Shown here: piece after piece, positions 1 through 64,000 of the stretch | How positions within the stretch are numbered: the stretch's first letter is position 1 | Layout: every line of letters begins with the position of its first letter | DNA from: Penicillus capitatus | Lineage: Eukaryota > Plantae > Chlorophyta | Assembly: GCA_965649825.1 (NCBI GenBank) | Contig: OZ287714.1 | Location: 186,001 to 250,000 of the forward strand | Reading direction: 5' to 3' | DNA length: 64,000 nt | Notes under the pieces: model-generated | The model's input: only the letters and a program-made list of their open reading frames with translations | What the model was told of the DNA's origin: nothing | The model's database searches: none | Program-made: the position numbers and the translations under genes

Positions 1-3000
1 CCTGATCAAGGTGGTTCGCCGTTTCAAGCTTCTCCGAGCAGAGAACGCAGGAGGAACAACATCTTGGGCCGCTGTCGTCATGTCACTGCTCAATCCACTG
101 GTCTCCACAGAGGACGAAGGACAGCAGCTCCTGTCGCTCATCAGACAGGCATTCGGCGAAGAAGCAGAGATAATCGCAAGATCCTGCAAGGAGAAGCACA
201 TCCAGGAGACGAGTCACGGGCTCTCGTTTTTCCAGGGACCTCTCTGCGTTTCCTTCAGTGGATATCGACTGGATCGAAGCCGTCTGTGGAAACACGGCAG
301 TGCTGCGAAGCTCCCTCCCAAGATCTTTCAAGATAAGCTCGTCGAGTTGGCATTCACGATGAAGGCGAGGGAACCAGTGCTCCTGTACGGAGAGACTTCG
401 TTCAAGACAGAACTGATCAGGACGTGGCTGGAGATCTCTGAGATGATGGACAGGGCACAGATGGTACACTTGACGTCCGATTCCGAAGCGACGGAGCTGA
501 TCGGCCAAGTGCGTCTAGCATCCACAGTGGAAGTCCTTGAGATGTTGCTGTCCATCGGCAACTTCATTCTCCGAGAGATCGAGGCAGAGCTCATCGTGAG
601 TGACAAGTCCGAAAACCGACAACTCGACATTCGACGGATTGACTGCGCGAGCGATCTTCCCAGAAGAATCAGTGTACTCAACGAACTCTTCAAGGGAAGA
701 CTAGGAATTCCAGACGATCGGCTCTCGGCTGCCTCTGTCAGAGATACACAGTCTGCACCCTCTGACACGGATGAGAAAATGGAGGATTCGCCGGCCGCCG
801 AGTACCAGGGATCCGGTGATGGTTCAAGCAGCGGTACGGAATGGGGAGGATCTGATGAAGAAGGAGGCCCCGTTCAGAGGGAACAGGAATCGATGGACGA
901 GAACAAGGAGGATTCGCCGGCCGCCGAGGACCAGGGATCCGGTGATGGTTCAAGCAGCGGCACGGAATGGGGAGAAGCTAACGATGAAGACAGAGGCCAG
1001 GTTCAGAGAGAAGAGGAATCGAGGGATGCTGCTGGCAGTTTCTCTGGCGACCGGCACCCAGATGCAGATGCAGAAGTCGAGATCAGCGAAGCAAGGGAAC
1101 GCGCCGAAGAGCCCGAATACAGAGCATTTAACTCAGTCCTCGAAACGGTCAGGGAGATCGTTGATTTGCTCAACGAGGTCTTCGATCAGCACCCACCGGT
1201 TGCCCTGGAACGAGCAGTCCAACGAATGAACCAGTTGTGTGCGTTTATGTCGGATGCCAGTCGGGCTAAGAGCCATGGATGCTTTGTCTTCCGTGATGGT
1301 CCGTTTGTCAATGCCATCACGCTGAAGCACATATGCGTCCTTGAAGACTACGATCGATGTCCACAGTCTGTGACAGAACGACTGAACAGTGCACTCGAAC
1401 TGGATCCGACATTCTCCATTCCTGAGGACACATCTCTCAGCGGAATCGGTGCTGCGACGCTGGATATTCCAGAGACGGGTTACGCGTTCGTAACAACGGC
1501 AAATTTGGAGTCCGCTGCCAAGAAACCGAGACTCTCGGAGGCCACCAAGAGTAGGATCACGCGAATCCACATCCCGGCGTACTCCAGTGAGGATATCATG
1601 TCGATTGTCGATGCGAAGCTCTTCTGCGAGACGAAAGATGATTATCCGAATGAAGCTTCTCAACTGATGGATGCCATCCGAGCCATTCAGTCTGCATCTG
1701 TGGAAGAAACACACGAGAATCCATGCGCCGATTTTCGAAGAACTCTCAGATGGGCCAACTTTGTCATACACCATCCGAGGGAGACCATGACTTTCGAGAG
1801 AATCGTCCTGCTGGGAGCCAGATACTTCTATCTCCTCGGCCTGACGCCAGAACAGCAAAAGAACATCCTGTTGAGTCATTTCGGCGATGAAGTTCGCGCC
1901 TTGGACAAGGCACTCGACGAAGTCAAGGCCACGGAAGGGAACAGCGCCTCCTCCTTTGGCATCACGATCGAAGATCGAATAGGTAGAGGCGATCGATTGG
2001 CTCGATTGGATGGTGTGGGTCTCGCACTGAGCATTCCCCCTCAGACAGAAGGGGACAACGCATGGCGACCTGCGCTGCATAGAACTCCGACAGTCGTGGA
2101 CAACACCGCTCGCATCTTCGCCTCCGTCTGCACCAAGACACCTCTGCTGCTCGAAGGGCCGCCAGGGATCGGGAAGACAGCAGTCGTGGTCGAAGTGGCC
2201 GGGCGTCTGGGGACAGGAGTGGAACGCATCAACTGTTCGAGCGACACGACCGCAGAGCAGTTGTTCGGATCGGATGTTCCGCAGTACAAGGACAATCGGC
2301 GGACATTCGATTGGATGGATGGCAAGCTCGTCGAGGCAATCAAGCAAGGCAGATGGATACTGCTGGACGAGATCAACCTGCTGTCGCCTCAGGTGTTGGA
2401 ATCGCTCGTTCCGTTGCTCAACGGATCGGCTGTCGAGCACGGATTGGCGATTCCCGGTCAGTCGGGGGCAAAGAATCTAACGGTGAAGGATGTCCACATC
2501 TTCGCCACGATGAACCCTGCTGCCGAGGGGGGAGGCAGAACGAAGCTCTCCAGATCCATCCGGAATCTCTTTACGACCGTCGAGCTCGATCCCCAGAGCA
2601 ATGACGAACTGTTTGAGATTCTGAAGAAGCTTTTCAGCGACCGCATCGGTCAGGAGGTCGTCAGTGAGAACAGCATCCAGCAGCTCTTTGACGTTTTCAC
2701 GAGCGTACACCTGATGGTCGAGATGGGAGAGATCAGAGGCGCCAGCAGAAAGCAGAGATTCAATCTGCGCGACCTCGTGGCCGTCAGAGACATCGTGGCT
2801 GGCAACGTCGGCGATCAGCTGTCTCACTACAAGATCGTGGCGACAGATGATTCGAGAAAAGACCTTTCGGACGAAGAGAGAGCCGCCGTGGTGGATGCCG
2901 TGCTTCGCAACGCATTGCAGCTCGTCTTCAAGCATCGATTCGAGAACCAGGCTGCTCAGGAACGCATCCAGAAGGCCATCGATGATGCGGTTGAACAGCC

Positions 3001-6000
3001 AAAACTGCTGGTCGATGAAGCGAACAGCACTTCCATTGACACATCCGTGAGCAATCTGGTCCGCATCGGAAGCGTTTACTTAGACAAGAATCCCGATCGC
3101 GCATCCTCCGGACTTCTGGTGCACACCAAAGAGACGGTCGCGCAGCTCGAATTGCTGGCGGCGGCCAGCCAGTCCACCAGGACCGTCCTGCTGCAGGGAC
3201 CGACGTGCTCCAGGAAGACGTGCCTGGTGAAGGAGCTGGCGGCCTTGACAGGCAGACCGTTACTAGTGCTCTCGTTGCACAGAGACTGTGATGTCTCCGA
3301 TCTGGTCGGCCAGTGGTTGCCGGCAAGGACAGACTCTATTCACGGCCAAGTCCTCCAAGCACTTCTGCACCTTCGCGACAGAATCATAAGAACCGGACTT
3401 GCTCTCTGCGAACGCATTCCCAAGGACAAGCAGACGGAGTTTTACCGGGCGATCAAGAAGGCGCGGTGCGGCAGCGATCCTTCCCAGGAAGCGTCCAGCG
3501 ACAAGCGATTCCATCGGTTTGACTTGGGGATCGGCCACGAACTGGTTCAAGGACTGAAGGATGCCGTCGATTTCCTGGAGAGCATCGATGGAGGATCGAC
3601 GATCTCCTTTGCCGAAGAACTGCATGTCCTGTCAGACAAGCTACCGCCGTCGATGGATGATGCAGACAGGACAGTCGTCTTTCAGTTTGTGACCTCCGAT
3701 CTCGTGAAGGCTCTCAAGTCTGGAACGTTCATTCTGTTCGACAACATCAACGCCGCACCTCCCGAAGTGATCGAGAGAGTGCTGTCGCTCTTCGAAGAGG
3801 AGCCGTTCTTGAATCTCTACGAGCATGCAGAGGGGGAAAGGCTGTCGAGGCAATGCGGCATCCATCCAGATACTCGGCTCTTTGCGACGGCGGACCTCAA
3901 CAGGATCAACACACACAAGCTGTCCAACCCCCTTCTGAACAGAATGATCAAGATCTGGCTACCCGAGATCGATGCAGGGGTCTCCGAAGCAACATCCGAG
4001 TTCCTAGAGAAGCACGAAGTCGTGGAGATTCTGTCAGAGAGGTTCGCTTCCCACGCCGGAGGCAACATGTCTGCTCAGCTCCTCTGCTTTGTCCACGCGA
4101 GAGTCAAAGAGCTTGACAGGAACTGCCAGGTTACCATTGCAAAGGACTCTGGCATCAGTTTCCGCACACTGCTTGAAGCATCCTCCCTCGTCATCTCTCT
4201 CCTCAGAAACGATCAGCCTGTTTTCAACGCTGTTGTGTGGGGCGCATGGCGAGTCTATGCATCTCTCTTGGAGGACGAAGAAGACTGGGTGAAGCTGAAG
4301 GAAGTCATTCGAAGCGCTTGCGAGGCGGCAGCAGAAGTGCCACCGTCCAAGTTCTATGCCATTCGACAGAGCAGAGACGCCGTCAAGCCGTTTGTCGCCG
4401 AGAGCAAAGACATCCGCCTCATCTTTGCATCCGTCGTCCACGTTTCCCTTAAGATCCTGTTCGGACACATCATGAAGATCCAGGACATGGACGCATTCGA
4501 ACGACTCGTCCTCCAGTTCATGAATCGAGTGGCGGTGAAGCTGTATCCGCAGGAGGAGTCGACGATTCGCAAACTCGCGGATGAAGTTCCCAGAGGGGCC
4601 AGGAACAAGGATGCACTCCAACGCGTCTGCGACAGCACTGGATGTCTTCCGCTGACAGAGTTCTTCAAGGCCGTCCATCTCAACGAGAGGCAACGGCTGG
4701 ATTTCGTCTGTGATCATCCTCAGAAGCTGGTGTCTTTGTGCGAGCAGCTCGTCGCCAACTCCTCGTACACTGACTGGGAAGACAGGCGCTTCATGATCGA
4801 GGACATTGCAGATGTGCTGAAGGAACTCGAGGATCTGCTGGAAGCCCTTTCGGCGCAGTCCGAGTTGTCTTCGGATGGCAAGAAGATCGTCGATGTCGTG
4901 CGGCACTGGCGCCCCATAGGAAACCTCTCCGTCTATTTTGTCCCGCTCGAAGATGTCTCCTTCGCGACGTGCTACAGAGAATTGCTCCAAGCGCAAGGCG
5001 TTTGTTGTGACAAGGCAGTGAGCTACAACTTGGAGAAGCTGCTGTCGGAAAGGGTGTCGACATCGGACATGAAACTCAGACATGTCATCGTCAATCTCCT
5101 GAAGAGTAATCAACGCTTGGCAGAAGAACGCAGAAGAATGGCACTGCAGATAGCCATGACGTCGCTCAGATGGAAGACGACATTGATGGTGGACGAACGG
5201 CTGTTGACGGTTCAGAGAGTCCCCGGAAGTGGTGGACACATCTTGGACCTGCAGAAGCTCCTGTGCCAGGCGAAGAAGATCGAGGAGCTGCGGCATCTCG
5301 TTCACGAAGCCATGGAGGTTTACAAATCGGCCAAGAGAGGACAAGGATACTGGAAATATGCCGTGGATGTTGGAAAGACCATCTGGCCCTTTGGTGGTCG
5401 GAGTTTTCAATATTCTTCCGACGGATCTGAAACCGAAGACTTCCCTCCTGACGAGGAGGTCGATGGCGTGACCATGCCCGACATGGCTCCTTACATTGAA
5501 CGGCTCGATGCTATTGTTCAGTCACAAGATGCCGTGTTCCTGTTCGCGGACGAATGGACAGCCACTGTGGAGTTCCACGCAAAGATCTTGAACGATCTGT
5601 CCGCCGGCAGAGAGAGTGGAAGAAAGAATTTGAATCTCGATGCGGTTTTCCCCTCTCTGCTCGGTTCGCGAATGAAGGACCAGCCACAGGATATGTGCGC
5701 CAATGAGCTTGCCCTGATATGGCTCGGGGTTTGCTTCTCGGAGTGGCAGAATCCTATTCCGTGTCGGATCGTGTTGTGCACAGAAGAGAATCTCGCACTC
5801 GATCCGTTTGACGGCAAGGAAAGCACCGTCTCTGCTGTCATTCTTTGTGCAGAGCTGGCTGCTGAGCAGAGAATTGCAGCATTGGCGTCGCTTGTTGTTT
5901 TTGAGAAGACACCTTCAGACGCTGGCAGGGAGACATCCGTAAATGTCAAATCCTACTGCTGTGGGCCGTCCGATCTTTCGCAGTTGACGTGGCTCAGGAA

Positions 6001-9000
6001 ATGGACCGAGATGCATACGGAATACAAGATGGACCTCTCCGATGTGCAGCGGCTGCCCGGAACAGCGACGATTGAGGGACCGTTGTCGCGATTGGGCAGC
6101 GGTCTGATCGCTTTCCTCGACGCACTGCAGTCTTATGGCCAGAATCATCCGACTCCTCACAGTACAGCGCCTTCCGAAGCTGTCCGTACGTGGAAGGATC
6201 TGATCAGGAAGGTGAAGGTACCCAGCAGGAGGCAGGATTTCTCCCGGGCACCTTTGCTGTACCACGGCGTGCTGAAGCTCGACTCTGTTCTTTACCGACA
6301 GCAGTACGGGAACATCGAGAACGAGTCTGACATCTCGTCTGTTGAAGATCTTTTCAGCAAGCAGTTCGTGGCATGGGTCGAAGCCGAAGTCAGGAAAAGC
6401 ATGGCGAAACTCAAGACAGAGGCAACACAGCCTGACCGACGAGAATCGGCCTCCATCGCCTACAGCTTTCTTGAGCACTTTGAGGCATTGAAGAAGTTCC
6501 CGAGTGAAGATCTGGTGTCGAAAGCATCTGAGCTCGAACGTGACATTCGAGCAGCGCATGGAGATCTATTCTTCGCGCTGGATTATATCCGTCCAGTACT
6601 GCGCCTACGAGAGTTCTTAATTGAGTATTCTCTGGTACATCTGGACACATCTGACCCAGGTCTGTGGACCAAGTGCAATGCGGTGACTGCGTTTGTTCTT
6701 GGATCGATTGCCTATTTCAATGGATTTCTGATCGCGGACAGAGACAAGATCAAGCTCGATAGGAAGAAGTCGGCACAGGAGTTCGACGACTGGGATGATA
6801 ACTTGAAGGATCTTGTCGATGAATTGGGCATATCCAGAACAGCTTTGGAGGCCAACAATCTCTACGAGATCTTCCTGCGACTCAAGGATCAGTACGTCCG
6901 CCTCTTGCAGACTGAAGAGCGGAAAAGGACGCTGACCGAGAGCTTGCACGCCGCGGCGGATTCAAGTGCTTCGTCATCCAGACCTCCCTCCAGGAAGTGG
7001 TTAGATGATGACAGATCCAGCAACTTCGCATCCGATCTGAGATCCGGTTACGAGGATCTCTGGCTCAAAGCAAGAGAAATCGCAGACAGAGCCGTGATGG
7101 ACGAGGCTGCTTCGGCGCTCAGTGCATTGACAAGGCGTTCTGTGCGCATCAGTAAGGCGCTTCTGGTCCAGTACCAGAGTAGGTACAATAGCCTCAAAGC
7201 TGAACTCGATCAGGCGAAGAAGAAGAATGCTCGACATCCACCTGTCATTTCCAAAGAGTGTGAGACCTTCGCGCAAAACCTATCCATCTGTCTGCAGAGC
7301 TGTGATTTCTCACTCGTTTCCTCAGAGGCATCTCCTGCAGACCATACAGTCGAGAATCCACACGTGGAGATTGTTAGACGCGTTGCCTCCCTCACGGATC
7401 GAGCAGAGAGTTCCATGAAGACTCTGATGTGGATGGCCAAGAGCACGGCATTCCATGCACGTCTGCGGAAGAGCATGGAGGTCCTGCGAAGCTACGATTT
7501 TGACGACGAGGACCTCAGTAAGAAGAAGGATGTCCTGGAAGAGCTGTCGGATTTGGGAGTCTTTCCTGGTGCTCTGTCCATTCGAATGAAATTCCGCGCA
7601 CTTGACTCCGAGGTCTGCGATGGCCTGATTCAGGAGGCCGCGGTGGAATTGATGAACGCCAAGGCAGACTTCCTTCTTGAAGAGCAGAACAAGATGCTTC
7701 ATCTAGACAAGACTCAAGAAATACAAAACGCATTGGCCTCGATCACATCACTGTGCATGGAAGACAACTCCTGTTCGATGCTGATGGCTCATCAGGTCTT
7801 CAACGCCTTGAGAACACACAGCATGGATCTCTCGGCATGTCTGGACGAATCTGCCACGATGACCAATGTGGCATCTTCTTTCCTATCTGCCGGACTTTCT
7901 GTGGAAGACATCGCTGTTCTTTTCTGCGGAGACTTCAAGATGACGCAACGCACACTGATGGATCTGACGGACGAAAGGAGTTTGGCTTCTGCAGGAGACG
8001 ATCCCGTACAGAAGATGCGTCGAAGAGGTCGACTGGTGTCCTACGGCTACCAGAGGGATAACGGTGATATCATCTACGTTTTCAGTGGCATCACAAAAAC
8101 GGTCGGAAACGCGGTGGCGGCATTTCTCGATTCTGATTGGGGACTGAAGCTTGCATCAGAATCTGGTGACGCGCATACAGAATCTGTGAAGGAGGCGTTG
8201 ATCAGTCTGCAGTTCATTGCGTTGCCTCTTCTGATGATCAGACAGAATTTCAGCTTCCTGTCTTCGCTTCTACAACTGTCGGATTCCGTTGAGGAGCAGA
8301 GAACTGCAAAGGAACTGAGGATGGTGTGCAAGCATACCACAGACGAGCTGAAAAAGGCACGTGACGAGCTGGAGGAAGTAAAGGAGCGAAGAATCTATCA
8401 TCCTATTTCTGATTCAGACTTCATGGACACCGCCTGGTGGATGCGCACTGCAGAGGGAATACAAGCCGAAGAAAGGATCGAAACATTGACCAACAAGAAA
8501 AATGAACTCGGAGAAAAGATGATGGACGCAGACGATCGGCTTCGTCGATTGCAGCCCAAAATCTGTCAGCGTCTCTCGTCTTCCCTACGGGATCTGTTGC
8601 AGGACGGACTGCATTGTCTCAGTCGTATCTTCGGATACGAGACAGAATACTTTGAGAGTTACTTGAAGGCAGAAGACGACATTGCGGACGCTTATGCATT
8701 ATTAATCGAGGACGCCGCCCGTTCCGGTCTCGTGATGTTCAGGGATAGTGATGGCATTCACTCAGAATGGATTATCGCGCTTGAACAGTTGTGTCGAGAA
8801 CTGGATGCATTCAAGCGCGAGCAGCTGTCAGATCTGAACATCGGAGATCCTTTCCGCAACGCTCTGCAGTCTCTTTGCACCGTCGCCTCTCTTGGATCCA
8901 GACGCATCATGCAACTCATCTCCCGCAACTGTGCGAAGGAGTCTGTGAATATGCTGCGCGTCACCGATCTGGAGAGAAGGTTCTTGGATGGATGTGACAC

Positions 9001-12000: not shown

Positions 12001-15000
12001 TGTCTACACGGTCGAGGTGGAGAATCGCACGAGCGAGGAAATCCGTGTCCATCTCTCGCCAGTGGATCCATCTTCTCAGGCTTTTTATGGAACAGCATCG
12101 ACAGATGTTACTCTGTATGGAAAGACCAGTTGGCACTTCAGATTCGGCATAGATCCTGGTGTCACTGGGCAGATCGCAGAATCGTGGAAGATAACATCTT
12201 CCGATGGAAGACTGGATGCCAGATTCAAGATGATCATCGAAGTCCAGAGACTTGCCGTGCAGCTCAGCACAGACGCCATCGATCTCGGCACTGTCATCAC
12301 CAACTCTCAAGACATCGAACAGACACTGCACATCAAGAATGTGACAGACTTTCCTCTCTTGGTCAAGAGTCAAGTGCAGTTCAGACGCACGCGTACTCAG
12401 TTCACTCTCTCTCCTCAGTCCTTCCATCTGGACGCACGCAGTTCTCAGTCCCTGACAGTGACGATGCATCCTGGTGACATGGATGAGGATGTCGACAGCA
12501 AGATGGTCCTCGGCATCGTCGGCAATATGAGATACATTCCGATGACAGCCCAAGTTACGCGACCGCTGTACGAGTTGGAGACTGACACAGGAAACAAGAT
12601 TGAAAGGATGGTGTTCCGTATGCCGGTGGTCCCACCTTGGAAGAAAACAAAGGCTGTCATTCGAATTCGGAACACAGGAACAGTTCCTGTTATCTATCGT
12701 TTTATTCCGGCATCGTCTCTTCTCAAGATTCGTGGAACTTCTGGTATTGTCCATGTTCGTGAGACATCTTCCGATATCTCGCTTTCAATGAGGCGCCCTT
12801 TTGCAAATCGATTGCGGCAGGAACTCAGAATTCGAATCGTCGGATGCCTCGAAGAAAGACTCGTGATCGAAGGAGAGTGGATGGAACCGATACCGAATTT
12901 CCTGAAACATAATGTCAACTTCGAAGTCCGGCAAGAGCATGTGGATATCATTGCACAGGGAAGCAGATCCATCACACTCGAGGAAACGAATACGGTTGAA
13001 AACAAAGCTGGTGTCCATGTCAACATCTACCCTCCTATCAGCAGGAATTTCGAGTTTGATCAAGATTGCTACTCGCTCGATCCGAACAGTAAAGTGAAAA
13101 TCGTCATGTATTGGAAAGTGCAGACCCTGAAGGTGAAGCAGTCCACCGTTGTCTTCTGCACTGAAAATCAGAAGAAGATAAAATTCACTGTGTGTTTGGT
13201 CATGCCCAAGTTCAACACAGTGATCTGCCATCCTCGCAGTCTCTTCTTCAATCCTCTCAATGTCAGCCAAAAAGAGACGAGAAAACTGGACATATTCACT
13301 AAGAAGCCTACTCTGATCAAGACCCATTTGGTAGAGACGCCCCAGATTCAGTCCTTGTCGCTGAAGTCGAAGATGGCCGTGGGAGGAACAGGTTCCAGCA
13401 AAAAGGGACCTTGGATATTCGGCTCAAATGACATGCCACAAGAGTTTCATCCCAATTGGAACTGTGTGGTCACGCAGATTGAACTGCAGACTGGCACGTC
13501 AACCGGATGGATCGTAGAGACGTTGCAGATTCAATCGGAAGATGACTTCTTGATCAAAGATGATCTGTCACTGTGCCTGCCGCTGACACACAATGTGGTT
13601 CTCCTGGCGTATGTTGGACACGCTTCCTCCGCTGCTCGGCAGATGATGAACTTATGTGCAGAATCCAGTGAAATCAGCAGCTCTCCGAGAAGTGGCGGGA
13701 AGAACTGCCTGCCAAATCTTCATCTTCTCTGTGCGCTTCAGCTGCACCTTGCATCCACTGTCCAAGCGTTCTGTTTTCTGCTGCTCAGCGAAATGTTCAT
13801 GCTGAAATCTGACTGGCCGTTATCCGATGAGCAAGCTGAACATATTCTCGAAAGCGATCCTGAAGACATCCCCAGCGAATGTGCTCAGTATGCAGGAGAT
13901 TTGTTTCGGGAATTGGATGGTATCCGTGATACTTCTCAGAACCTCAAAGAGTATTTTGAGCGTGCTTGCGTGCCTTTTCGGGATGGAAGACGGCCACGCT
14001 TTGAAAACATCTGTCTGCCTTCCATCATTCTGGATGATCTCTCCCCTGGCCTGCGAAGGATGGCTGTAGCTCTGTACATGCTGCGATCAGACTGTCGCGA
14101 AGATCAGCAATGGAAGGCCGCCATCGCATGCCTCAGCGATACCTTTACGGATGAATCAAGGGCATGTCTGTTTGAAAAGTGCGGCAGAGAAATATGGGAA
14201 AGCGGCTCCCAGAATGAACAACGGACTATGAAGAACTGCCTCGAACGAGTGAAGAGCATACTTGTACATGACGTGAATGAACGTATCGAGTTCTGTGAAA
14301 TGATGGAGGGCGTGCTGCAGTGCGGAGATGGAGTCCAGGATTCCGAATCGTTCGGTCAGCGCATTGCCCAGAGCCTCACTGAGCTGTGCCCTACGATCCC
14401 GCCAGCAGTCATCACGAATCTGATGACCATGAAGACATGGAGTACAGCGGAGATTGACCTCGTTGCCCTCAAACAGTATCTGGCGAACGCAGAGACGAAG
14501 GGCGTGATAGACGGTTTGTGCTCCAGAACCGCAGCAGGCGTTTTCGATGCATTCTGCGTCTTGGCCAAGATCAGAGGAGGTGGGACTGGAGAGGCCGTTG
14601 TCCATCATCTGCTGAGCGTGCTTCTTGGCAGAAAAAGAGATTCTGACAATCCTGTCGGTGTGGTGGGCACCCCTATGGATTCGAAGAACATCACTCAGAA
14701 GATCCTACAGAGAGGGAATCTCGAAGAGCTCGTATATCCTCTGTCGATGCTTCACACGGGGAACTACAGAACCTTGCAGCACAGAAACCGATACGTCCAA
14801 CAGATCGCAATCGAGTTGTTCTTTGGGCAGATGGATGACACTGACATTCCCAAAGAGAATCTGGGGTCACTCAAAGAAGGTGTACAGAGGATCATCAGCA
14901 GCACGCTCGACATGGACACAGCAATCTCTGAAGAATTGCATGGATTCACGGAACATCATCGTCAGGAGGCTCTGAAGCGCAGCATGTCCGAGATTGTGAA

Positions 15001-18000
15001 GCTCGATGTCGTCAGTGAGGGAAGCCATGGACTAATTGCTCCACTTAGGAGCATATTAGTTCAATGGTTCAGTCTGGAGACCACCAAGAGTTCTGACATT
15101 CGGAAAGAGATTTTGGACAAGAAGGAAGAAACTCTGAGGCAGGCGCTTATGGTTCTCAAGCCCGAGACTCTCTCAAGCAGCACCAATCCATTCGACTTGG
15201 CCTCGAGAGTTCTCCGGTGTGCTGCAGCCGTGAAGACGACAGAGATCGCGAAACCTGAGGTGGTGAACGGGTTGACACAAGCGGCAGCCGACTTCACACT
15301 AAGCAGTGTCCTGTCTCTCTGCAGAGCACTGGCTCAAGAGATCTCCGGCGTGGATGTTCTATCCGCTGTTCTGGATCTTGTGGAAGAAGAGCGAGAGAGC
15401 GAAAGCCTGAGGAGGGAAATCGTAGAAGCCGTCTTTCCAGAGGAGCACAGCGATTTGCTCCTCTGTGCCATTGATCCCTTCATCAATGGCGGCACAGAGA
15501 TCGACGACGAGACCCGCGACAAAGAGGCGTTCGATACACTCGTGTCTCTGCTGAAGCTTGCCAGAGCCAAAGAGTCTGTCAGTAAGATAGACGGAGAGAA
15601 GAGAATGATGCTTTCAGGCCTTCTCGAAATCAAGTCACTCGTGGATCAGATTGCATCTCTCGAAAAATGGAGCGACTGCAGGAAGAAGAGTGACGTCCTG
15701 AAAGAGATCTTCTTCAGCTTCTATGCATGTGTCATTCCGGATGAGCTCTCCGCCGAAGCCCGCATCTTCAGCAGGATGGCACTCCTTCATTCATTGTACC
15801 GATACTTTGCCGGCGACGTCTGGAAGCAGAAGGAAGCTCTTCACGTCACGCGGTCTGTCAAGCTCGAATTTGAGACGGCAGTTGTCCCAGATGCATCGTA
15901 TCAAGCAGCAATGAGCGATGATGAGGATGAGGGCAAGGGCGTCTCTGTGACAGAAAATGTGTCTAAGGTGCTGGATGGTGGTGGTAGTAGTAGTGAGACT
16001 GCAGTAGGAAAGTCCAGTGCTGTTCCATTGACAGTTGAAACAGACTGGAAGTGGTTCTTGCCGTCCATTGATGTCCCAACCAGTCAAATCGCCCTTTTGT
16101 CAAAAAGTGCCTCACACGATTCTGTCGAGAGAGATGGATCAACCGAGATCAAATCCAACGATCTGCCTGAGTCTTCCACGGCCGTGCCTGCAAACTCCTT
16201 CCAGAGCCTGCAGACAGTGGAGGCCGCTCTCAAAGATGTCTCGCAACGTCTCAAGATTCAGGACGTTTTGGAGGGTCTCCACGATGAAGGCAATTTCACG
16301 ATCATGACGTTCGGTGACATGACACATGCCATTGTCCATCTGAAAGAAACGACTGAGCAATGGTGCGTTCTCTTCGAAAAGGCTGTTCGCCTTTGTCGCC
16401 ATTCGAGGCAGGAAGAAGACATGATGGTCGAGAGCCGAATTGTGTGTGCAGGAATTGATATTAGTTTCCTTTTCCAGTTTCTGCGACAGTACCTTGAAGA
16501 CTTCAGCCTTTTCCAGATGCCAGATGCTATGCAGCCCGTCTACCGCAGCGTCGTGCATTGCTTGAATGCGATTCCCAGGAAAAAGCTTCCGAAGGAACTC
16601 AGAAGTCTCATGGAGGAAGCTGGAGCCACAGAGGCATTCCATGGATACACTATTGACTTCAACATGCCTCCAACGAACGTCCATCACTCGGGCACATCTT
16701 ACGGAAGACCGTCAACTTCTGATTCCGCACGAAAAGCACGAAGACCTGAGGCTACCCGTTTTGAAATTGGCATGCAAGATGGTCCAGATCCGGCCCAGGA
16801 CAAATCGAGTTTCTATGACTTCTTGAAATCGACGGCCGCGATGGATGGATCTCAGACAAAAGACAAAGTCTCTGTGGTGCTGGAGGGAACCGTGGACATC
16901 AAGATCGACTCGGATGCGAAAATCTGGACAGCCGGAACCAGAACAGGGCCAACGGAAGATGCAGTGGACGATGTCAAAGCCACAGGGGCATTTAAGCTCC
17001 CGGATCATCTGGCATGGAGTACTATAGGTGTTCTTGGACAGACCGCCTCTTCCGGCGAAAGAATCCAAAGAATTCCAAGTGTCCAGGAAGATTATTTCGA
17101 CCTCTTCACCGGGGCCGCAGATGACGACGCTGCATTGATTCGCGTAGGGGTCGATTCCAGCCGCGAAGCTGCCCGTAAACGAGTGGAACAGATGTCTCAG
17201 ATGCCATCTCTTTACCATCACGACCAAGAAATCAGCGCAGCTGCGAACCTTCATCCGGTGGAAGATCCAGTCCATCCAGAACCGACGCGCCTCGACAACT
17301 GGACCTATCAACTGCTGCTGGACAATGCCACTTTCACCAAGTGCCTGAAGACAATGATGCATGGATTGGAGAGGGGTTACACAGAGCTTTACAAAGCTGT
17401 CGCCGAAAGGCATGTGATCGAGTGGTGTCTGCTCGTTGACAATTCGGGATCCATGATCACCAAAGAACACCAAATGAAAGAAGCTCTTGTACTGGTGATG
17501 GAGATGCTCCACAGATTGGAGTTCCACTTTGCCGTGGCTCTCTTCGGCGACAGCGCCTCTCAGCGAATGCAGAAGCTCATCAGAGATCCGTTCACTGTCG
17601 ACGTCGGACAACAGATCATCGATGCTTTCACTTTCGACGAAGGAACATTCCCTGCATCAGCCGTCAGAAATGTAGCGCAGAAAGTGTGGCCATTGAGTCT
17701 CTCCCAGGAAGAAAAGAGACAGCATCACAGAGTGATGCTCATGATTGTTGATGGCTTGACTCAGGAACGGAAGAGGGAGGACTATCTGTCCGTGTGCAGA
17801 GAGAAGAACATCAGCTTGGTGGTCCTCAATATCCACGATGACCTGCAAAAGGATTTGATGAGTTCCATCAGAGCACTGTGGACGAGCGTCGGTGCGCAGT
17901 TTGCCATGCTCCATGTGGATGAAGTCGATGCACTGCCAAAAGTTCTCGTCAGTCTGATCGAACAGCAGATGGGTATCATCTACCAAAGCATCACGAATTC

Positions 18001-20031
18001 TCCCCTGCCTGCATCTGCAACGGATTCTGTCCCAGTCGTCCAAAACATTCCCGAAACCGATTTTAGAGACGTCGACTTCGATGCTATCTGCGAAGATTTT
18101 GGCAAGAACGTGTTGCCTGTGCTGCCAGAGGGGTTCACCAGGGAAGACTTCATCGAATGTGACTATCGTCCAGGCGTCATTCCCTTCGCAGAGGAGATGG
18201 GCCGACGGGTCACGAAAGAGATCGAACCGATCGACGTTGAGAAACTGGCAGACGAACTCCAAAGGCAGTACGACGCCCTGCTGACCAATTCGAATGCGAG
18301 AGAGCATCTGAAGGCGGCCGAGAAAGCCTGGATGCAGACCGAGGAGCGTCTGGGATCCGAAATCGGTCGCGTGGCCGAAGCCTTGGAGAGCTACCTTCCA
18401 CACAACGTCTTCAACCGAAAGAGAGCGGATGTGAAGGGACCGACGATTCACATTCCTGGATACATCAAGCATCTGGCGACACAAGGAAGCGAGAAGAAGA
18501 TCTTCGCGAACAAGAAGGGAGGTGGAAGGGCAGAGTACGCCGTCGCGCTCCTCCTGGACATCTCTGTCTCGATGAAGCACGGAATCAAACAAACGTGTGC
18601 TCTGGAAACACTCTTCCTGATGATTGGGGCACTCCAGCAGATGAACATCGACAACTTTTCCGTGGTTCTGTTCGCCGAACAGATTTATCCGATTAAACTG
18701 CCGGATATGGCGTGGGAAGATGCGTGCATCGCCATGCTCATGAAGATTGTAGAGCAGGCACATGAGCCTGCGACCATGGATGCCGATGCACTGCTCTTCT
18801 CCGAGGAGCTGTTGGAATCCAGCAACGTAAGAGGACCCAAGAAGATCTTTATCATGACGGACGGCTATGGAAGCTCTGGTGTGCGACTCGCCTCCGCTTT
18901 GTCCAAACTTGAAGTGTCAGGAATCGATGTTCTGGCGATGAGCGTTGGCCCCGAAGTCTCCTTTGTCAAGAACTGCTACAACAAATGGATCACAGCTGCC
19001 TTTCCTCATCTGTTGCCGAATGCCATCGAACGAATGGAGAATGCCACGCGGACGGCGGCTCATAAGCAGAATGCGAGCCTTGGGGAACCTATGGTCTGGC
19101 TGAACCTTCGCCTTCTCCCAGAAAGCACGAACGAATCCGTCCGAGACATTCTCGAGAAGCAAGAAGCAGTGTTCTCCGACTTGGCACCTATGCGTGAAGA
19201 GAGAGAAGCACGATTGATACGTGGCAACAGACCATCCAGGATGTCAGTGGACATTTGCTTCTGCATGGATTGCACTGGATCTATGGGCCCTTGGATGAAA
19301 GCCGCCGTTGACCAAATCAATGTAAGGCTCACATCTTGGCTGGCAGTCTTAATGTCTTTTGTCGGCAACGTTTAGGTGATTTGCAGTACCATCTCTGAAA
19401 AGATCCAGGAGAAGCATTCTCTCGTGGAATTGGTTTTTAATTTCGGCATGGTTGCCTACAGAGATTACGGAGATGGTGATCGGCACATATGCCCTTGTCC
19501 CTTTGCACAAGGGCCAGATAATGTGCGCCAATTTCTCTCGCAGCAGAAAGCAGGAGGAGGAGATGATCCGGCAGAGGACGTCCTTGGAGGTCTGAATGCT
19601 GCCGTAGAGTTGGAGGGATGGAGCAGCAAAGTGAGATTCTGCATTCTCATTGCCGATATCCCTGGACACGGAAAAGATCTGCACACGAGTGAAATCAAGG
19701 ACAGGTGACCATCGACACTGATCCCTGCTCCGTTTCCAAAAGTTCTGTGCATAGATTTCTAGATGGCGATCCCCGCGGACTCACTGCTGAGGATACAATG
19801 AAGAGAATGCGAGAGAACAAGATCCACTTGCTTTTCTGCAGGATCACGAAATACACTGATATGATGATTGAGAAATTCAAGGCATGCTATGATGAAGGGA
19901 AATACTGTTTGGAGTCTAGGGATTTGGTGCCGCAAGAGGGGGCCTCTTCAACATCCAAAGTCGTCACAGATCAGTTCGGAAAGATCATTGGTGACATGTG
20001 CTCGAATGTCATTGTCGTCAACTTTCTTTAG
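1..20031 (+). CDS. Giant midasin-like AAA+ ATPase with ASH/Ig array and three C-terminal VWA domains (5'-truncated; about 6,640 aa in window)
   Basis: Frame is open from base 2 (L-I-K-V-V-R), so the start lies outside the window. AAA motifs: PVLLYGETSFKT (~374), LLLEGPPGIGKT...WILLDEIN (~2150-2375), VLLQGPTCSRKT...FILFDNIN (~3190-3750), matching midasin D4/D5/D6. MIDAS motifs: DNSGS (17438), DISVS (18557, preceded by a midasin-like W..E...L.....P segment), DCTGS (19268). Introns 19322-19375 (GTAAGG..TTTAG) and 19705-19754 join three track ORFs, ending at stop 20031. Confidence 0.9.
781..1032 (+). repeat. 126-bp (42-aa) tandem duplication inside the giant ORF, acidic/Gly-Ser rich
   Basis: ggaggattcgccggccgccgag starts at 781 and again at 907; peptides EDSPAAEYQGSGDGSSSGTEWGGSDEE.. 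and EDSPAAEDQGSGDGSSSGTEWGEANDE.. Confidence 0.95.
19322..19375 (+). other. Phase-0 spliceosomal intron (54 nt) in the third VWA domain of giant gene 1
   Basis: AAT|GTAAGG...TTTAG|GTG; removal joins AAVDQIN to VICSTISEKI; an equivalent intron is present in the paralog. Confidence 0.9.
19705..19754 (+). other. Phase-2 spliceosomal intron (50 nt) in giant gene 1
   Basis: AG|GTGACC...CATAG|A restores KDRFLDGDP; the paralog has DDR|FPDGDP with an intron at the same point. Confidence 0.9.
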
Positions 20032-20338
20032 CCTTTGCACCAACAAACAAACACGATTGATTCTCATTTTTTGAAACCGATATCATTTTTGCAGTGCTTT
20101 ACGAATGGGCACACCTTGAAACATGAACGTGGAACCTTGAAGGGAAAGTCTTGCGTCCAGTTGCGTCGAGACCAAGTTCTCTTGTTTAGCCCAGTCCATG
20201 AAAACTCTTCAGATCCTCGATCGATTGCTGTATTGAGCTGAACAAGTGGTCATGTAACAAACACCACAGTGTGGGTACGACATGATGCGACGGCACGGCG
20301 TCACGTCAGCTCTTTCCTTCCGGATTCTGCTTGCGGCT

Positions 20339-62700: not shown

Positions 62701-64000
62701 GCAGTGTTCATTTTTTCGGCGAAATCTCTAAAGATCTGTGCTTTGGTGCCGCGATCAGTCAACAATGCATGACGCGCCAACAGTCCTCCACTCCCATCGA
62801 CATCCAGACAAGCGGATTTTCTTGGCTGGTGTGTGATACAGTCATGGGCGACGCTTCTGTTAAAACTGAAAATGACTGCAACATCGTCTTCCGTGAGCTC
62901 AGGGCATAAGAATGAGAAGTTTGCACTTGCCATCGACGAATGCGAAGCAAGGCGTGTTCTCAGTTTTGCTGCATGCTCCCTCAGTTTCTCAAAGGTCGAA
63001 ATGGCTTGCAGCACCGTCAGCGTCTTTCCAGAACACATGTCGAGTAGACCGATGATTCCATTTTTTATGTCCTCAGCTCGCCACGCCCGCAGCAGTTCAC
63101 GATATGGTCCTAAGAGATGTTTAGCTTTCATGCTGATGAGCTCGTCGACAGCTGCATGGATAAGAACATCGTGTACCTCTTGTTTACTGGCTTCAAAAGT
63201 CAACTGCAGCTCCAGTTTGTCAGAGAATACATGCAGCTGAGATAATTCAGTGACCCTTTTACTCTTTTCCTTTGGATCCTCCGCCTTTTTGTAACACCGG
63301 ATGATTTCAGCTGCTTTCTTCGATAGAGCTTGATGTTGACAAGACTGCATCCATGACATCAGCTGTTCCAAGAACTTTTCGGTATCTTCTGGTCTCTCAA
63401 GTTCCTCTGTCAAGCACTTCTCTAGATCGTTCATCGGATTCGTGTTCGTCCAGCCACTTTCAGCAAAAGTGGACGGTAAGTTATTCACTGGAGCGAAGGA
63501 GGATTCTCGCAGACAGCTGTCATACATTATGCTCAACTCTTTGCTTTCTTGTGCCACTGAGAAGTGTTTTTCACTGTCCTCATTCAACATCGATCTATTC
63601 AGATCTTGAAGATTGCCCAATTTGTCGCCGTATCTGTCCAATGTATCCATACTGCACGTTGACGGGTCCAGCCTATCCAGTTCCTTACACGTCTTGATGG
63701 CTTCCCTCATTATGGTGGCAGACGTTTGCTGGGGGCTCTTCTTCGCTTCTTGCCACAGACTTTGATACTTGCTCTTCAGGGTGCGAATCTCATACTTGTA
63801 TCGGTCCAACTGTGAACTCCATCCTGAATCGGGCCTACTCCTCATCAGATTGACATCACTGTCACCGAGTAGATTGCTGTCTTTTATTTCTTTCAGTTGC
63901 GCATACATACACTTCATTTCACCGAATACATCATTCAGACCATTTCTTTGCAGCAAGTCTTCTGAAATGCCCAATTCTTTAATGAGGCCCGTGTATCTCT
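50792..64000 (-). CDS. Paralog of giant gene 1: helical stalk, ASH/Ig array and three VWA domains (5'-truncated; about 4,360 aa in window)
   Basis: Frame is open to the window end (R-Y-T-G-L-I-K-E-L-G-I-S, aligning with DLVDELGIS at ~6821 of gene 1). IDFGTLL/INFGVV Ig repeats at ~57230-58890; MIDAS DNSGS (~53400), DISVS (~52280), DCTSS (~51565); introns 51469-51524 and 51087-51142; stop at 50792. Confidence 0.9.

What the first reader, a model, noticed from the sequence alone, without database searches (positions are those of the whole stretch)
1..20031. Giant non-canonical midasin derivative: AAA+ ring, huge stalk, Ig array and triple VWA
Seen: about 6,640 aa in window, starting only near the fourth AAA module. 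Known: canonical midasin/Rea1 is about 4,900-5,600 aa in total, with six AAA modules, a helical linker, a D/E-rich tether and one MIDAS domain. This protein keeps the D4-D6 signatures (including DN at the D6 Walker B) and the midasin-type MIDAS lead-in, but adds ASH/PapD-like Ig repeats and two more VWA domains. Inference: the full protein may approach 8,000 aa and be a neofunctionalised mechanochemical machine acting on substrates other than ribosome-biogenesis UBL proteins. By loose analogy with other giant AAA+ proteins such as RNF213, a surveillance role is possible but untested.
Basis: partly seen in the sequence, partly recalled or inferred. Interest (0 to 1): 0.85.

Follow-up and report, generated by a model that had tools for sequence, protein, structure and literature searches.

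The report
Giant sister-family relative of midasin
The first 20 kb of the window encode most of an intact protein of about 8,400 residues, from an uncharacterised family that is sister to the ribosome-assembly motor midasin and occurs patchily across eukaryotes; a second, divergent copy lies at the other end of the same window.

Summary
Window 2-20031 (+) is one gene: a stop-free exon of 6,440 codons, two tiny GT..AG introns (54 and 50 nt) and two short exons, 6,641 codons in all.

It encodes:
- AAA modules D4-D6 of a six-module ring
- a ~2,600-aa helix-rich linker
- an ASH/PapD-type Ig array
- a further ~1,200-aa region
- three VWA domains

The ortholog in a related species adds 1,783 residues upstream (N-domain, D1-D3), so the full length is about 8,400 aa.

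It is midasin-related but not MDN1. The AAA ring separates from canonical midasins of animals, fungi, plants, an oomycete and Mesostigma with 100/100 support, and Mesostigma has both kinds. D2 lacks midasin's large insert. Only D1, D3 and D5 keep intact Walker motifs. There is no D/E-rich tether and no detectable linker similarity.

VWA2 keeps the midasin-specific MIDAS loop (Rea1 E4656-K4700).

Relatives occur in green algae, a chlorarachniophyte, a cryptophyte, Amoebophrya and rotifers. All are unnamed, and I found no literature on them. A 30%-identical paralog sits at 50792-64000 (-).

The likely mechanism is an ATP-driven, MIDAS-mediated puller or remodeller of an unknown non-ribosomal substrate. 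The function is untested, and nothing supports a surveillance role.

The parts
2..19321 (+). G1 exon 1: 6,440 codons, open at the window's left edge
   Evidence: Stop-free translation. It is 77%/72% identical to adjacent ORFs P0002+P0003 of a related species. dN/dS is 0.31 overall.
329..1615 (+). AAA module D4 (aa 110-538). Walker A is degenerate (GETSFKT, nt 389-409) and Walker B is VLEDYD (nt 1334-1354). The module is split by an acidic insert of ~245 aa (nt 521-1258) that holds a 126-nt tandem duplication (769-863 / 895-989).
   Evidence: Module HMM and Pfam AAA_5; motif alignment; composition; direct repeat at 89% identity.
2084..2635 (+). AAA module D5 (aa 695-878), with intact Walker A GPPGIGKT (nt 2156-2179) and Walker B ILLDEIN (nt 2357-2377)
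   Evidence: AAA_5 at 1.1e-22 over the full-length profile. This is the best stretch matching Rea1/Mdn1 AAA5. Motifs.
3125..3976 (+). AAA module D6 (aa 1042-1325), split. Walker A is GPTCSRKT (nt 3197-3220) and Walker B is ILFDNIN (nt 3731-3751).
   Evidence: G1 695-1324 aligns to Rea1 1676-2239, which I read as AAA5-AAA6.
3977..11878 (+). Linker or 'stalk' (aa 1326-3959), with helix-former-rich composition
   Evidence: No Pfam hit and no PDB sequence hit. hhalign against the canonical midasin linker gives nothing (best E 0.2). Composition; dN/dS 0.29-0.42.
11879..13630 (+). ASH/PapD-like Ig array (aa 3960-4543): at least four beta-sandwich domains, and a fifth that is uncertain
   Evidence: Pfam, AF2, Foldseek. 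Conserved in P0001, P0086-P0091 and G2.
13631..17221 (+). Second region without recognisable domains (aa 4544-5740), between the Ig array and VWA1. There is no D/E-rich tether.
   Evidence: No Pfam or PDB hit. The D/E profile shows only local peaks.
17222..18061 (+). VWA1 (aa 5741-6020), with MIDAS motif D-N-S-G-S (nt 17435-17455) and a beta4 'VDG' (nt 17744-17761)
   Evidence: Pfam VWA at 3.8e-8. The family HMM hits the midasin MIDAS domain, best 8e-24. dN/dS is 0.14.
18287..19225 (+). VWA2 with the midasin-type lead-in loop (aa 6096-6408). The loop starts near nt 18395. MIDAS motif is D-I-S-V-S (nt 18554-18574) and 'TDG' is at nt 18854-18871.
   Evidence: Pfam VWA at 2.7e-5. The family HMM hits 55 of 56 canonical midasins, best 1e-31, including the lead-in. 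In a PDB profile search the best match is the Rea1 MIDAS domain, chain residues 4544-4706.
19238..19321 (+). Start of VWA3 at the end of exon 1, with motif D-C-T-G-S (nt 19265-19285)
   Evidence: Read directly from the sequence. It aligns with the VWA_4-type third domain of relatives.
19322..19375 (+). Intron 1 (54 nt, GTAAGG..TTTAG), in frame and containing the TAG that ends the long ORF
   Evidence: Sequence reading. The homologous position is interrupted in G2 and in L001, where P0003 ends at the same point.
19376..19704 (+). Exon 2: the core of VWA3 (..YRDYGD.., ..LIADIPGHG..)
   Evidence: 35-45% identical to the third VWA of Bryopsis, Amoebophrya and Chlorarachnion relatives. That domain is Pfam VWA_4 in those relatives.
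19705..19754 (+). Intron 2 (50 nt, GT..AG), splitting a codon after its second base
   Evidence: Sequence reading. G2 has an intron at the same position and phase.
19755..20031 (+). Exon 3: the end of VWA3, then the conserved tail helix and C-terminus ..VIVVNFL, then the stop
   Evidence: The tail motif is conserved across the family.
50792..64000 (-). G2, a second giant paralog that runs off the right edge. It has an Ig array, VWA1, VWA2 and an intron-split VWA3, and ends ..VILVSFF.
   Evidence: Pfam. It is 30% identical to G1 over ~2,600 aa. Exon structure. Its upstream part, with six AAA modules, is in L002, which is 99.76% identical to the window.

Best explanation
**What it is.** G1 is the 3' four-fifths of an intact, selectively constrained gene. 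The gene encodes a single-chain hexa-AAA+ mechanoenzyme of about 8,400 residues. It belongs to a distinct, uncharacterised eukaryotic family that is sister to midasin (MDN1/Rea1), not to the ribosome-biogenesis midasin itself.

**Shown here**
- A six-module AAA_5 ring, with D4-D6 in the window and D1-D3 in the ortholog.
- Only D1, D3 and D5 keep canonical Walker A and B motifs.
- A spacer of ~4,400 residues between the ring and VWA1, holding an ASH-type Ig array.
- Two MIDAS-competent VWA domains of midasin type. VWA2 retains the counterpart of the Rea1 loop E4656-K4700.
- A third VWA of the VWA_4 type.
- A family-wide conserved C-terminal tail.

**Inferred mechanism, by analogy with Rea1**
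- ATP hydrolysis at the three intact sites remodels the linker relative to the ring.
- VWA2, and probably VWA1 and VWA3, hold acidic residues of protein ligands through a bound metal ion.
- Linker movement pulls on the ligand-bound VWA head. This would extract or reposition a component of a large assembly.
- The rigid Ig array serves as a spacer or docking platform.
- The conserved C-terminal tail may dock back onto the ring.

The substrate is unknown. It is probably not the pre-60S particle.
For: **One real gene**
- 6,440 stop-free codons plus two spliced exons.
- Collinear orthologs at 61-77% identity.
- dN/dS of 0.14-0.42 along the whole length.
- A 7,408-aa Chlorarachnion transcript model spans four AAA modules through to a fourth VWA and the family's conserved C-terminal tail.

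**Midasin relationship**
- The best PDB hits are Rea1/Mdn1 (5e-89), followed only by MoxR-type NorQ and CbbQ.
- The VWA2 profile hits the MIDAS domain plus lead-in of 55 of 56 canonical midasins (1e-31) and of Rea1 in the PDB.
- The Rea1 residues aligned, renumbered by +57, are the E4656-K4700 loop. PMC11603028 reports that this loop is essential for substrate removal and contacts the linker top.

**Separate family**
- The concatenated ring tree splits it from canonical MDN1 with 100/100 support. The G1, Mesostigma Mv01936, JGI and Rotaria clade has 98/97 support.
- Mesostigma has both kinds.
- D2 has no large insert, while D4 has a 250-320-aa insert.
- D2, D4 and D6 are degenerate. In Rea1, AAA2-AAA5 are all catalytically complete (PMC11603028).

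**Distribution**
- 392 cluster representatives (one per 50%-identity cluster) match the VWA1-VWA2 query (E<=0.001), 116 at E<=1e-30, several of 4,000-7,750 aa.
- Named members come from green algae, Chlorarachnion, Rhodomonas, Amoebophrya and rotifers.

**MIDAS competence**
- DxSxS and the beta4 Asp are present in VWA1 and VWA2 and conserved across the family, together with a conserved Thr in the position where MIDAS domains usually have one.
Against: - No functional, localisation or expression data exist for any member.
- The linker shows no detectable similarity to the Rea1 linker, so a Rea1-like swing is assumed, not shown.
- The AF2 model of VWA1-VWA2 was unusable (pLDDT 38).
- The N-terminal ~1,780 residues of G1 itself were not seen and are inferred from an ortholog at 82% nucleotide identity.
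- Module-by-module orthology to midasin D1-D6 was not resolved. The family's even-numbered modules cluster with each other rather than with their midasin counterparts.
- Whether this genome also has a canonical MDN1 was not determined.
Confidence: 0.65

Rival explanations
1. It is simply this organism's highly divergent canonical MDN1, doing the usual pre-60S remodelling.
For: The ring is midasin-like and VWA2 keeps the midasin MIDAS loop. A canonical MDN1 from the same genome was not retrieved in my searches.
Against: - The family splits from all canonical midasins with 100/100 support.
- Mesostigma carries both a canonical midasin (P0026) and a family member (P0006).
- Two copies at 30% identity lie in this one window.
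- There is no AAA2 insert, D2 and D4 are degenerate, and there is no D/E-rich tether.
- My searches were limited by protein length and by shared words, so failing to find MDN1 is not evidence that it is absent.
Confidence: 0.05
2. It is a cilium-, basal-body- or centrosome-associated remodeller. The ASH-type Ig array would target the motor to microtubule-based structures, where the VWA head extracts or loads components.
For: The Ig array matches HYDIN/CFAP65/Cep192-type ASH domains. Its best structural matches are ciliary central-apparatus proteins and the CEP192 SPD-2 domain. From general knowledge, not tested here, all named host taxa make flagella or cilia at some stage.
Against: - ASH/PapD/MSP folds also occur in non-ciliary proteins, so this is fold-level similarity only (TM-scores 0.2-0.4, 10-14% identity).
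- Most eukaryotes are ciliated, so the phyletic pattern does not discriminate.
- The family appears absent from well-studied ciliated models, since no named hits from them appeared's sampled names.
Confidence: 0.2
3. It is a surveillance or immune-type giant NTPase, the reader's RNF213 analogy. It would be related in logic to prokaryotic MoxR-vWA conflict systems.
For: - dN/dS is fairly high for a large conserved machine (0.3-0.4 in the linker and Ig array).
- Distribution is patchy, with multiple paralogs.
- MoxR-vWA pairs are cores of prokaryotic conflict systems (PMC7159879).
Against: - Pfam found no effector domain (E3 ligase, nuclease, protease, TIR or similar) anywhere in the 6,641 residues.
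- The paralogs are ancient (30% identity) with conserved intron positions, and do not form a recent, diversifying array.
- VWA1 is under strong constraint (dN/dS 0.14).
Confidence: 0.1
4. It is an artefact: several adjacent genes read as one, or a decaying pseudogene.
For: In metagenome assemblies the orthologs are called as 2-4 adjacent ORFs.
Against: - The window ORF is continuous for 19.3 kb.
- The breaks in other assemblies are short in-frame or phase-consistent introns, or ORF overlaps.
- The architecture is collinear in relatives, including the long Chlorarachnion transcript model.
- Purifying selection acts throughout.
- Antisense ORFs have no Pfam domains.
Confidence: 0.02

Closest known systems
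Midasin (MDN1 / Rea1 / Mdn1)
   Same: - Single chain with six AAA_5 modules, of which D5 is the best conserved.
- D6 is split and carries DN at Walker B, as in plant and animal midasins.
- There is an AAA_lid_7 trace.
- A long linker follows the ring.
- The MIDAS-type VWA has DxSxS and the conserved pre-beta1 loop (Rea1 E4656-K4700).

(PMC11603028)
   Different: - It forms a separate clade with 100/100 support.
- D2 has no large helix-2 insert, whereas D4 has a 250-320-aa acidic insert.
- D2 and D4 are catalytically degenerate, leaving an alternating D1/D3/D5 pattern.
- The ring-to-VWA spacer is about 4,400 aa, against about 2,300, and shows no detectable similarity.
- There is no D/E-rich tether.
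- It has an ASH Ig array.
- The MIDAS-type VWA is duplicated, and a VWA_4-type domain follows (with a fourth VWA in most relatives).
- It has a conserved C-terminal tail.
- It is about 8,400 aa, against roughly 4,900-5,500 for typical canonical midasins.
Dynein heavy chain
   Same: A single-chain hexa-AAA+ ring that mixes hydrolytic and non-hydrolytic modules and drives a mechanical linker (general knowledge; PMC3495828 for the shared MoxR ancestry).
   Different: No dynein appeared in the PDB sequence search at E<=1e-3. Dynein has no VWA domain, and this protein has no microtubule-binding stalk signature.
MoxR-class AAA+ with VWA partners (NorQ/NorD, CbbQ/CbbO, RavA/ViaA)
   Same: The AAA_5-type module is the next-best PDB match after midasin (NorQ 2e-8, CbbQ 6e-6). 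An AAA+ ring is functionally coupled to a MIDAS-bearing VWA domain (PMC7159879, PMC13036017).
   Different: Those are homo-hexamers of one-module proteins with the VWA on a separate polypeptide. Here six modules and three VWA domains are fused in one giant chain.
VWA8
   Same: From memory only: a eukaryotic protein that combines AAA_5-type modules with a C-terminal VWA.
   Different: It is about 1,900 aa and mitochondrial, and it was not compared directly. No VWA8-like protein appeared among hits of 660-2,100 aa, but that search pre-filters by shared words.
HYDIN / CFAP47 / CFAP65 / CEP192 ASH-domain arrays
   Same: Tandem ASH/PapD-like beta-sandwich domains.
   Different: Similarity is at fold level only (10-14% identity). 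Those proteins have no AAA+ or VWA parts.
RNF213
   Different: No sequence similarity was found and there is no E3 module. The analogy rests on size and fold class only.

Membership tests
Midasin (MDN1/Rea1) | Six tandem AAA_5 modules in one polypeptide | tested here: met
   D4-D6 are in the window. The ortholog P0002 and paralog G2 (L002) each show six modules. D1-D3 of G1 itself lie outside the window.
Midasin (MDN1/Rea1) | Groups with canonical midasins in an AAA-ring phylogeny | tested here: not met
   IQ-TREE on 1,098 concatenated module columns shows all canonical MDN1 (animal, fungal, plant, oomycete, Mesostigma P0026) on one side, and G1 and its relatives on the other. Support is 100/100 and the branch length 1.03. 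The tree is unrooted.
Midasin (MDN1/Rea1) | Large helix-2 insert in AAA2 (the auto-inhibitory AAA2H2alpha) | tested here: not met
   D2 is contiguous in P0002, P0004, P0005 and G2. In most canonical midasins examined it is split by an insert of ~60-190 aa (or spans an enlarged region). The family's large insert is in D4 instead (PMC11603028).
Midasin (MDN1/Rea1) | Complete catalytic motifs in AAA2-AAA5 | tested here: not met
   D2 Walker B is IVDN. D4 has GE(T/S)SFKT and VLED. Only D1, D3 and D5 are intact.
Midasin (MDN1/Rea1) | Linker of ~1,700 aa (stem/middle/top) homologous to Rea1's | tested here: inconclusive
   hhalign of an 11-sequence family linker alignment against a 17-sequence canonical alignment gave best E 0.2 and probability 0.3%. 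There were no PDB hits. The profiles are shallow and no structure comparison was possible.
Midasin (MDN1/Rea1) | D/E-rich tether of ~600 aa before the MIDAS domain | tested here: not met
   No extended acidic region lies upstream of VWA1 or VWA2. The only stretch with 24-29% D+E over 200 aa is the D4 insert.
Midasin (MDN1/Rea1) | MIDAS domain with the conserved pre-beta1 loop (Rea1 E4656-K4700) and the DxSxS motif | tested here: met
   This applies to VWA2. The family HMM aligns from the lead-in onward to 55 of 56 midasins (1e-31). The best PDB hit is Rea1 chain residues 4544-4706, which are native residues 4601-4763. DISVS and TDG are present. Unlike in midasin, VWA2 is not the terminal domain.
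Midasin (MDN1/Rea1) | Removes Ytm1/Rsa4-type UBL factors from pre-60S particles | not testable with these tools
   Needs biochemistry or genetics.
ASH / PapD-like Ig domain | Profile match above the curated threshold, and a beta-sandwich fold | tested here: met
   PF22544 scores 32.5 (cutoff 25.5), PF15780 scores 29.6 (cutoff 27) and PF00345 scores 25.6 (cutoff 23) for one repeat. The AF2 model is all-beta and Foldseek matches ASH arrays at E 1e-17. The other repeats are supported only by the model, partly at low confidence.
VWA / MIDAS domain | Pfam VWA above threshold, with DxSxS plus the distal Thr and Asp | tested here: met
   VWA1 scores 34.2 bits with DNSGS and VDG. VWA2 scores 24.9 bits with DISVS and TDG. 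VWA3 has DCTGS, and homology to the VWA_4 domain of relatives is indirect.
Giant AAA-Ig-multiVWA family (unnamed; G1, G2, Bryopsis GMH42204.1, Mesostigma Mv01936, Chlorarachnion MMETSP0109 model, Adineta CAF0973759.1) | Collinear architecture of ring, spacer of ~4,300-5,400 aa, VWA1, VWA2 with lead-in, VWA_4-type VWA3, and a tail ending [VILM][DE..][YFH][LMF] | tested here: met
   Domain maps for 18 members, tails and G1/G2 exons. G1, G2 and Mv01936 lack the fourth VWA that most members have.

The most novel reading that the evidence does not exclude
G1 and G2 represent a previously undescribed, ancient lineage of single-chain hexa-AAA+ mechanoenzymes. The lineage may date to the last eukaryotic common ancestor and would stand beside dynein and midasin. 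It has an alternating active/inactive ring, a spacer about twice the length of midasin's that carries an ASH array, and a head with several MIDAS sites. That head could grip two or three ligands at once and work on a large non-ribosomal assembly, perhaps a ciliary or centrosomal one. The family has since been lost from most model organisms.
Probability: 0.4. Interest if true: 0.78.

Novelty: new variant of a known kind. Interest (0 to 1): 0.62.

Why it matters
Midasin is treated as a single-copy, universally conserved eukaryotic motor with one job, maturing the 60S ribosomal subunit.

A sister family of still larger proteins would show that the midasin design (ring, linker, MIDAS) was reused for something else. 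This family keeps the ring and the key MIDAS loop. It changes which ATP sites are active, doubles the spacer, adds an Ig array and multiplies the ligand-binding heads.

It offers a natural comparison for open questions about how Rea1 transmits force from ring to MIDAS. It also adds a new entry to the short list of single-chain hexa-AAA+ machines.

The family is present in rotifers and in several algal groups, but unnamed everywhere. A modest experimental effort (localisation, pull-downs with the VWA domains) could assign a first function.

Tried and rejected
1. A single-sequence PDB search with the C-terminal 940 aa found nothing. Only a five-sequence profile recovered the Rea1 MIDAS domain.
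2. The AF2 model of VWA1-VWA2 (741 aa, five-sequence alignment) had pLDDT 38. It was unusable and I did not send it to Foldseek.
3. The AF2 model of the Ig array is good only for residues 230-440 of the piece, and the fifth domain is unreliable.
4. hhalign of the family linker against the midasin linker showed no similarity. phmmer of aa 1326-5740 against the PDB gave only sub-threshold PapD-chaperone hits at the Ig repeat.
5. The per-module tree (183 columns, FastTree) separates the family from canonical midasins for every module. It does not recover Dn-to-Dn orthology: the family's D2, D4 and D6 cluster together, and so do midasin's. It therefore cannot say whether the rings were assembled before or after the split.
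6. Tandem Repeats Finder found nothing in 1-20100. The two-copy 126-nt duplication in the D4 insert was found with the repeat finder.
7. Four full-text literature searches for a midasin paralog or midasin-like giant AAA/VWA protein found no description of this family. The papers I opened were about other things.
10. The six largest antisense ORFs inside G1 have no Pfam hits and I take them as non-coding.
11. No transmembrane-like segment is present.

Full report
**1. What is in the sequence**

The + strand from position 2 to 19375 is one stop-free reading frame that runs off the left edge of the window. About 6,450 stop-free codons in ~50% GC DNA cannot arise by chance; (61/64)^6450 is about 1e-135.

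The frame ends at a TAG that lies inside a 54-nt GT..AG interval (19322-19375). Translation continues in the same frame at 19376. A second 50-nt GT..AG interval (19705-19754) splits a codon, and the reading frame then runs to a stop at 20029-20031.

The same two interruptions, at the same positions and phases, occur in the paralog G2. The ortholog's ORF P0003 ends at the first of them. These are therefore real mini-introns. I searched the three exon pieces separately throughout.

**2. Domain anatomy**

Pfam finds AAA_5 in three places. A module HMM built from G1's D5 and iterated on relatives gives these positions:

| Module | Residues | Walker A | Walker B | State |
|---|---|---|---|---|
| D4 | 110-173 + 420-538 | GETSFKT | VLED | degenerate |
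| D5 | 695-878 | GPPGIGKT | LLDE | intact |
| D6 | 1042-1112 + 1220-1325 | GPTCSRKT | FDN | degenerate |

D4 is split by an acidic, low-complexity insert of ~245 aa. The insert contains a 126-nt tandem duplication.

After the ring come:
- about 2,630 residues with no Pfam or PDB match and a helix-favouring composition;
- an all-beta region at aa 3960-4543;
- about 1,200 further residues without recognisable domains;
- VWA1 at aa 5741-6020, with DNSGS and VDG;
- VWA2 at aa 6096-6408, with DISVS and TDG;
- VWA3, which starts with DCTGS at the end of exon 1 and is completed by exons 2 and 3.

One repeat of the all-beta region passes the curated thresholds of the HYDIN/CFA65-like Ig, ASH and PapD_N models. 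The AF2 model shows at least four beta-sandwich domains, two of them at pLDDT 80-87. Its best structural matches are ASH-array proteins of the ciliary central apparatus and the CEP192 SPD-2 domain.

VWA3's pieces have no Pfam hit on their own. Exon 2 aligns at 35-45% identity with the third VWA of intron-free relatives, and that domain is Pfam VWA_4.

No transmembrane-like segment is present. Antisense ORFs have no domains.

**3. Full length and reality of the gene**

Two adjacent ORFs on a metagenomic contig from a related species (L001, 82% nucleotide identity) are 77% and 72% identical to G1. Window residue 1 corresponds to residue 1784 of the first ORF. That upstream part holds an N-terminal region of ~800 aa and modules D1-D3. 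The whole protein is therefore about 8,400 residues.

Nei-Gojobori dN/dS between the two orthologs is 0.31 overall:

| Region | dN/dS |
|---|---|
| Ring | 0.18-0.31 |
| Linker and Ig array | 0.29-0.42 |
| VWA1 | 0.14 |

Every part is under purifying selection.

A 7,408-aa Chlorarachnion transcript model spans four AAA modules through to the last VWA. This supports a single product of this size in at least one member.

**4. Relationship to midasin**

Against solved structures the N-terminal 1,800 residues match only Rea1/Mdn1 strongly (5e-89). G1 695-1324 aligns to Rea1 1676-2239, which I read as AAA5-AAA6 from my knowledge of Rea1's layout. MoxR-type NorQ and CbbQ follow at much weaker scores, and dynein does not appear.

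Family HMMs for VWA1 and VWA2 both hit the C-terminal MIDAS domain of canonical midasins. VWA2 does so more strongly (55 of 56, best 1e-31), and its alignment starts ~75 profile positions before the DxSxS strand and so includes the lead-in. A five-sequence profile finds the Rea1 MIDAS domain as its best PDB match.

Renumbering that alignment by +57 to the native sequence shows that the lead-in is the E4656-K4700 loop. PMC11603028 reports that this loop is highly conserved, is required for substrate removal and contacts the linker top.

**5. Why it is not MDN1**

A maximum-likelihood tree of the six concatenated modules separates two groups with 100/100 support. One group holds all canonical midasins sampled: two animals, two fungi, a plant, an oomycete, one unnamed Logan-derived protein and Mesostigma Mv12798. 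The other holds G1 and its relatives. Within it, G1, its ortholog, Mesostigma Mv01936, a JGI protein and two Rotaria proteins form a clade with 98/97 support.

Mesostigma thus has one gene of each kind.

Further differences from canonical midasin:
- D2 is contiguous, whereas in most canonical midasins examined it is split by a large insert (the auto-inhibitory AAA2H2alpha of Rea1).
- The family's large insert is in D4.
- D2 (IVDN), D4 and D6 are degenerate, so only D1, D3 and D5 look hydrolytic. Rea1 has complete motifs in AAA2-AAA5 (PMC11603028).
- No D/E-rich tether precedes the VWA domains.
- The distance from ring to first VWA is 4,300-5,400 residues in all members, against about 2,500 in midasin.
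- Profile-profile comparison finds no linker similarity. This is a weak negative result.

The per-module tree did not resolve which family module corresponds to which midasin module.

**6. The family**

An exhaustive search with VWA1-VWA2 found 392 cluster representatives (one per 50%-identity cluster) at E<=1e-3, of which 116 are at E<=1e-30. Several of these are 4,000-7,750 residues long with the module near the C-terminus.

Named members:

| Organism | Accession or source | Length (aa) |
|---|---|---|
| Bryopsis sp. KO-2023 | GMH42204.1 | 6,477 |
| Cymbomonas tetramitiformis | KAK3259693.1 | 1,799 |
| Mesostigma viride | Mv01936 | 7,189 |
| Chlorarachnion reptans | MMETSP0109 | 7,408 |
| Rhodomonas salina | EukProt EP00961 | 2,618 |
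| Amoebophrya sp. A120 | CAD7924203.1 | 2,544 |
| Adineta steineri | CAF0973759.1 | 4,370 |
| Brachionus calyciflorus | CAF0989470.1 (partial) | 2,379 |
| Rotaria sp. (two proteins) | unnamed | 4,984 and 4,118 |

All are annotated as hypothetical, 'VWFA domain-containing' or 'MoxR-like ATPase/YegL'. Four literature searches found no description of the family.

Most members have a fourth VWA after VWA3. G1, G2 and Mv01936 do not.

All complete members end in an amphipathic helix followed by [VILM][DE..][YFH][LMF]-COOH. Among 149 hits the endings include DYL 16 times, DFL 10 times and DHL 5 times, against a background of 0.0009 per position. G1 ends VVNFL.

**7. Surroundings**

The window comes from a green alga. 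The neighbouring S10 carboxypeptidase is found at 100% identity on a 6.93-Mb contig, and its nearest named relatives are from Bryopsis, then other chlorophytes and plants.

The remaining genes are ordinary eukaryotic ones: SepSecS, a QSOX-like Erv1/thioredoxin protein, a GYF-domain protein, SHMT, a choline-transporter-like protein and an EF-hand protein.

The most relevant neighbour is G2 at 50792-64000 on the minus strand. It is convergent with G1 and has the same Ig, VWA1, VWA2 and split-VWA3 layout. It is 30% identical to G1 over ~2,600 residues and 23% over part of the linker. Its upstream part was recovered from a contig 99.76% identical to the window and has six AAA modules. Its total is about 8,300 residues.

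**8. Mechanism**

The architecture and motif states above are shown. The mechanism is inferred by analogy with Rea1 (PMC11603028):
- ATP turnover, here predicted at D1, D3 and D5, remodels the linker relative to the ring.
- VWA2, with the conserved loop, is the counterpart of the working MIDAS domain. It binds an acidic residue of a protein ligand through its metal ion, and VWA1 and VWA3 probably provide further grips.
- Linker movement pulls on the loaded head.
- The Ig array would act as a rigid spacer or docking platform.
- The conserved C-terminal tail could dock in cis on the ring.

The substrate is unknown. The ASH-type Ig array gives a weak pointer to ciliary or centrosomal structures. 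Nothing supports an immune role.

**9. Verdict**

Novelty is a new variant of a known kind, apparently undescribed in the literature I could search. Interest is 0.62.

Noticed in passing
window 50792-64000 (-), continuing in L002 1-14607: A second giant gene (G2) of the same family lies convergent with G1. It is 30% identical over the Ig-to-VWA part and has the same two mini-introns in VWA3. Its upstream ORFs (887+1621+1338 aa), on a contig 99.76% identical to the window, carry six AAA modules.
   Followed up: yes
window ~19960-20028 (G1 C-terminus); 50795-50860 (G2 C-terminus): The extreme C-terminus is conserved across the family: an amphipathic helix followed by [VILM][DE..][YFH][LMF]-COOH. 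DYL, DFL, DHL and EYL dominate among 149 relatives. G1 ends VVNFL and G2 ends LVSFF. It resembles a docking tail of the HbYX type, but this is untested.
   Followed up: partly
window 769-1026: A 126-nt tandem duplication (89% identity) inside the acidic insert of AAA module D4 encodes two copies of a D/E/S/G-rich repeat.
   Followed up: partly
relatives P0091, P0098, P0110, P0123, P0136 (C-terminal ~200 aa): Most family members carry a fourth VWA domain after VWA3. G1, G2 and Mesostigma Mv01936 go straight from VWA3 to the tail helix.
   Followed up: partly
L001 23811-23854: In the related species the ortholog is called as two ORFs that overlap by 44 nt, at a point where G1 (aa ~2808-2814) is continuous. 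This could be an intron, a frameshift or an assembly error there.
   Followed up: no
window 20282-21080 (+): Exon-like ORFs match SepSecS (selenocysteine synthase) immediately downstream of G1. The organism probably makes selenoproteins.
   Followed up: no
window 33594-37364 (+): Two adjacent long ORFs (865 and 382 aa). The first has no Pfam hit and the second has a sub-threshold match to the bacterial alpha-2-macroglobulin MG10 domain. They may be one gene of unknown function.
   Followed up: no
window 24000-28000: GC content dips to 42-45%, against about 49-52% elsewhere, around the serine carboxypeptidase gene (27073-28494, -).
   Followed up: no
module tree (P0002, P0004, P0005 against canonical midasins): The family's even-numbered modules (D2, D4, D6) cluster with each other, and so do the even-numbered modules of midasin, rather than Dn with Dn. 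This could reflect parallel ring assembly, within-protein co-evolution or a long-branch artefact.
   Followed up: no
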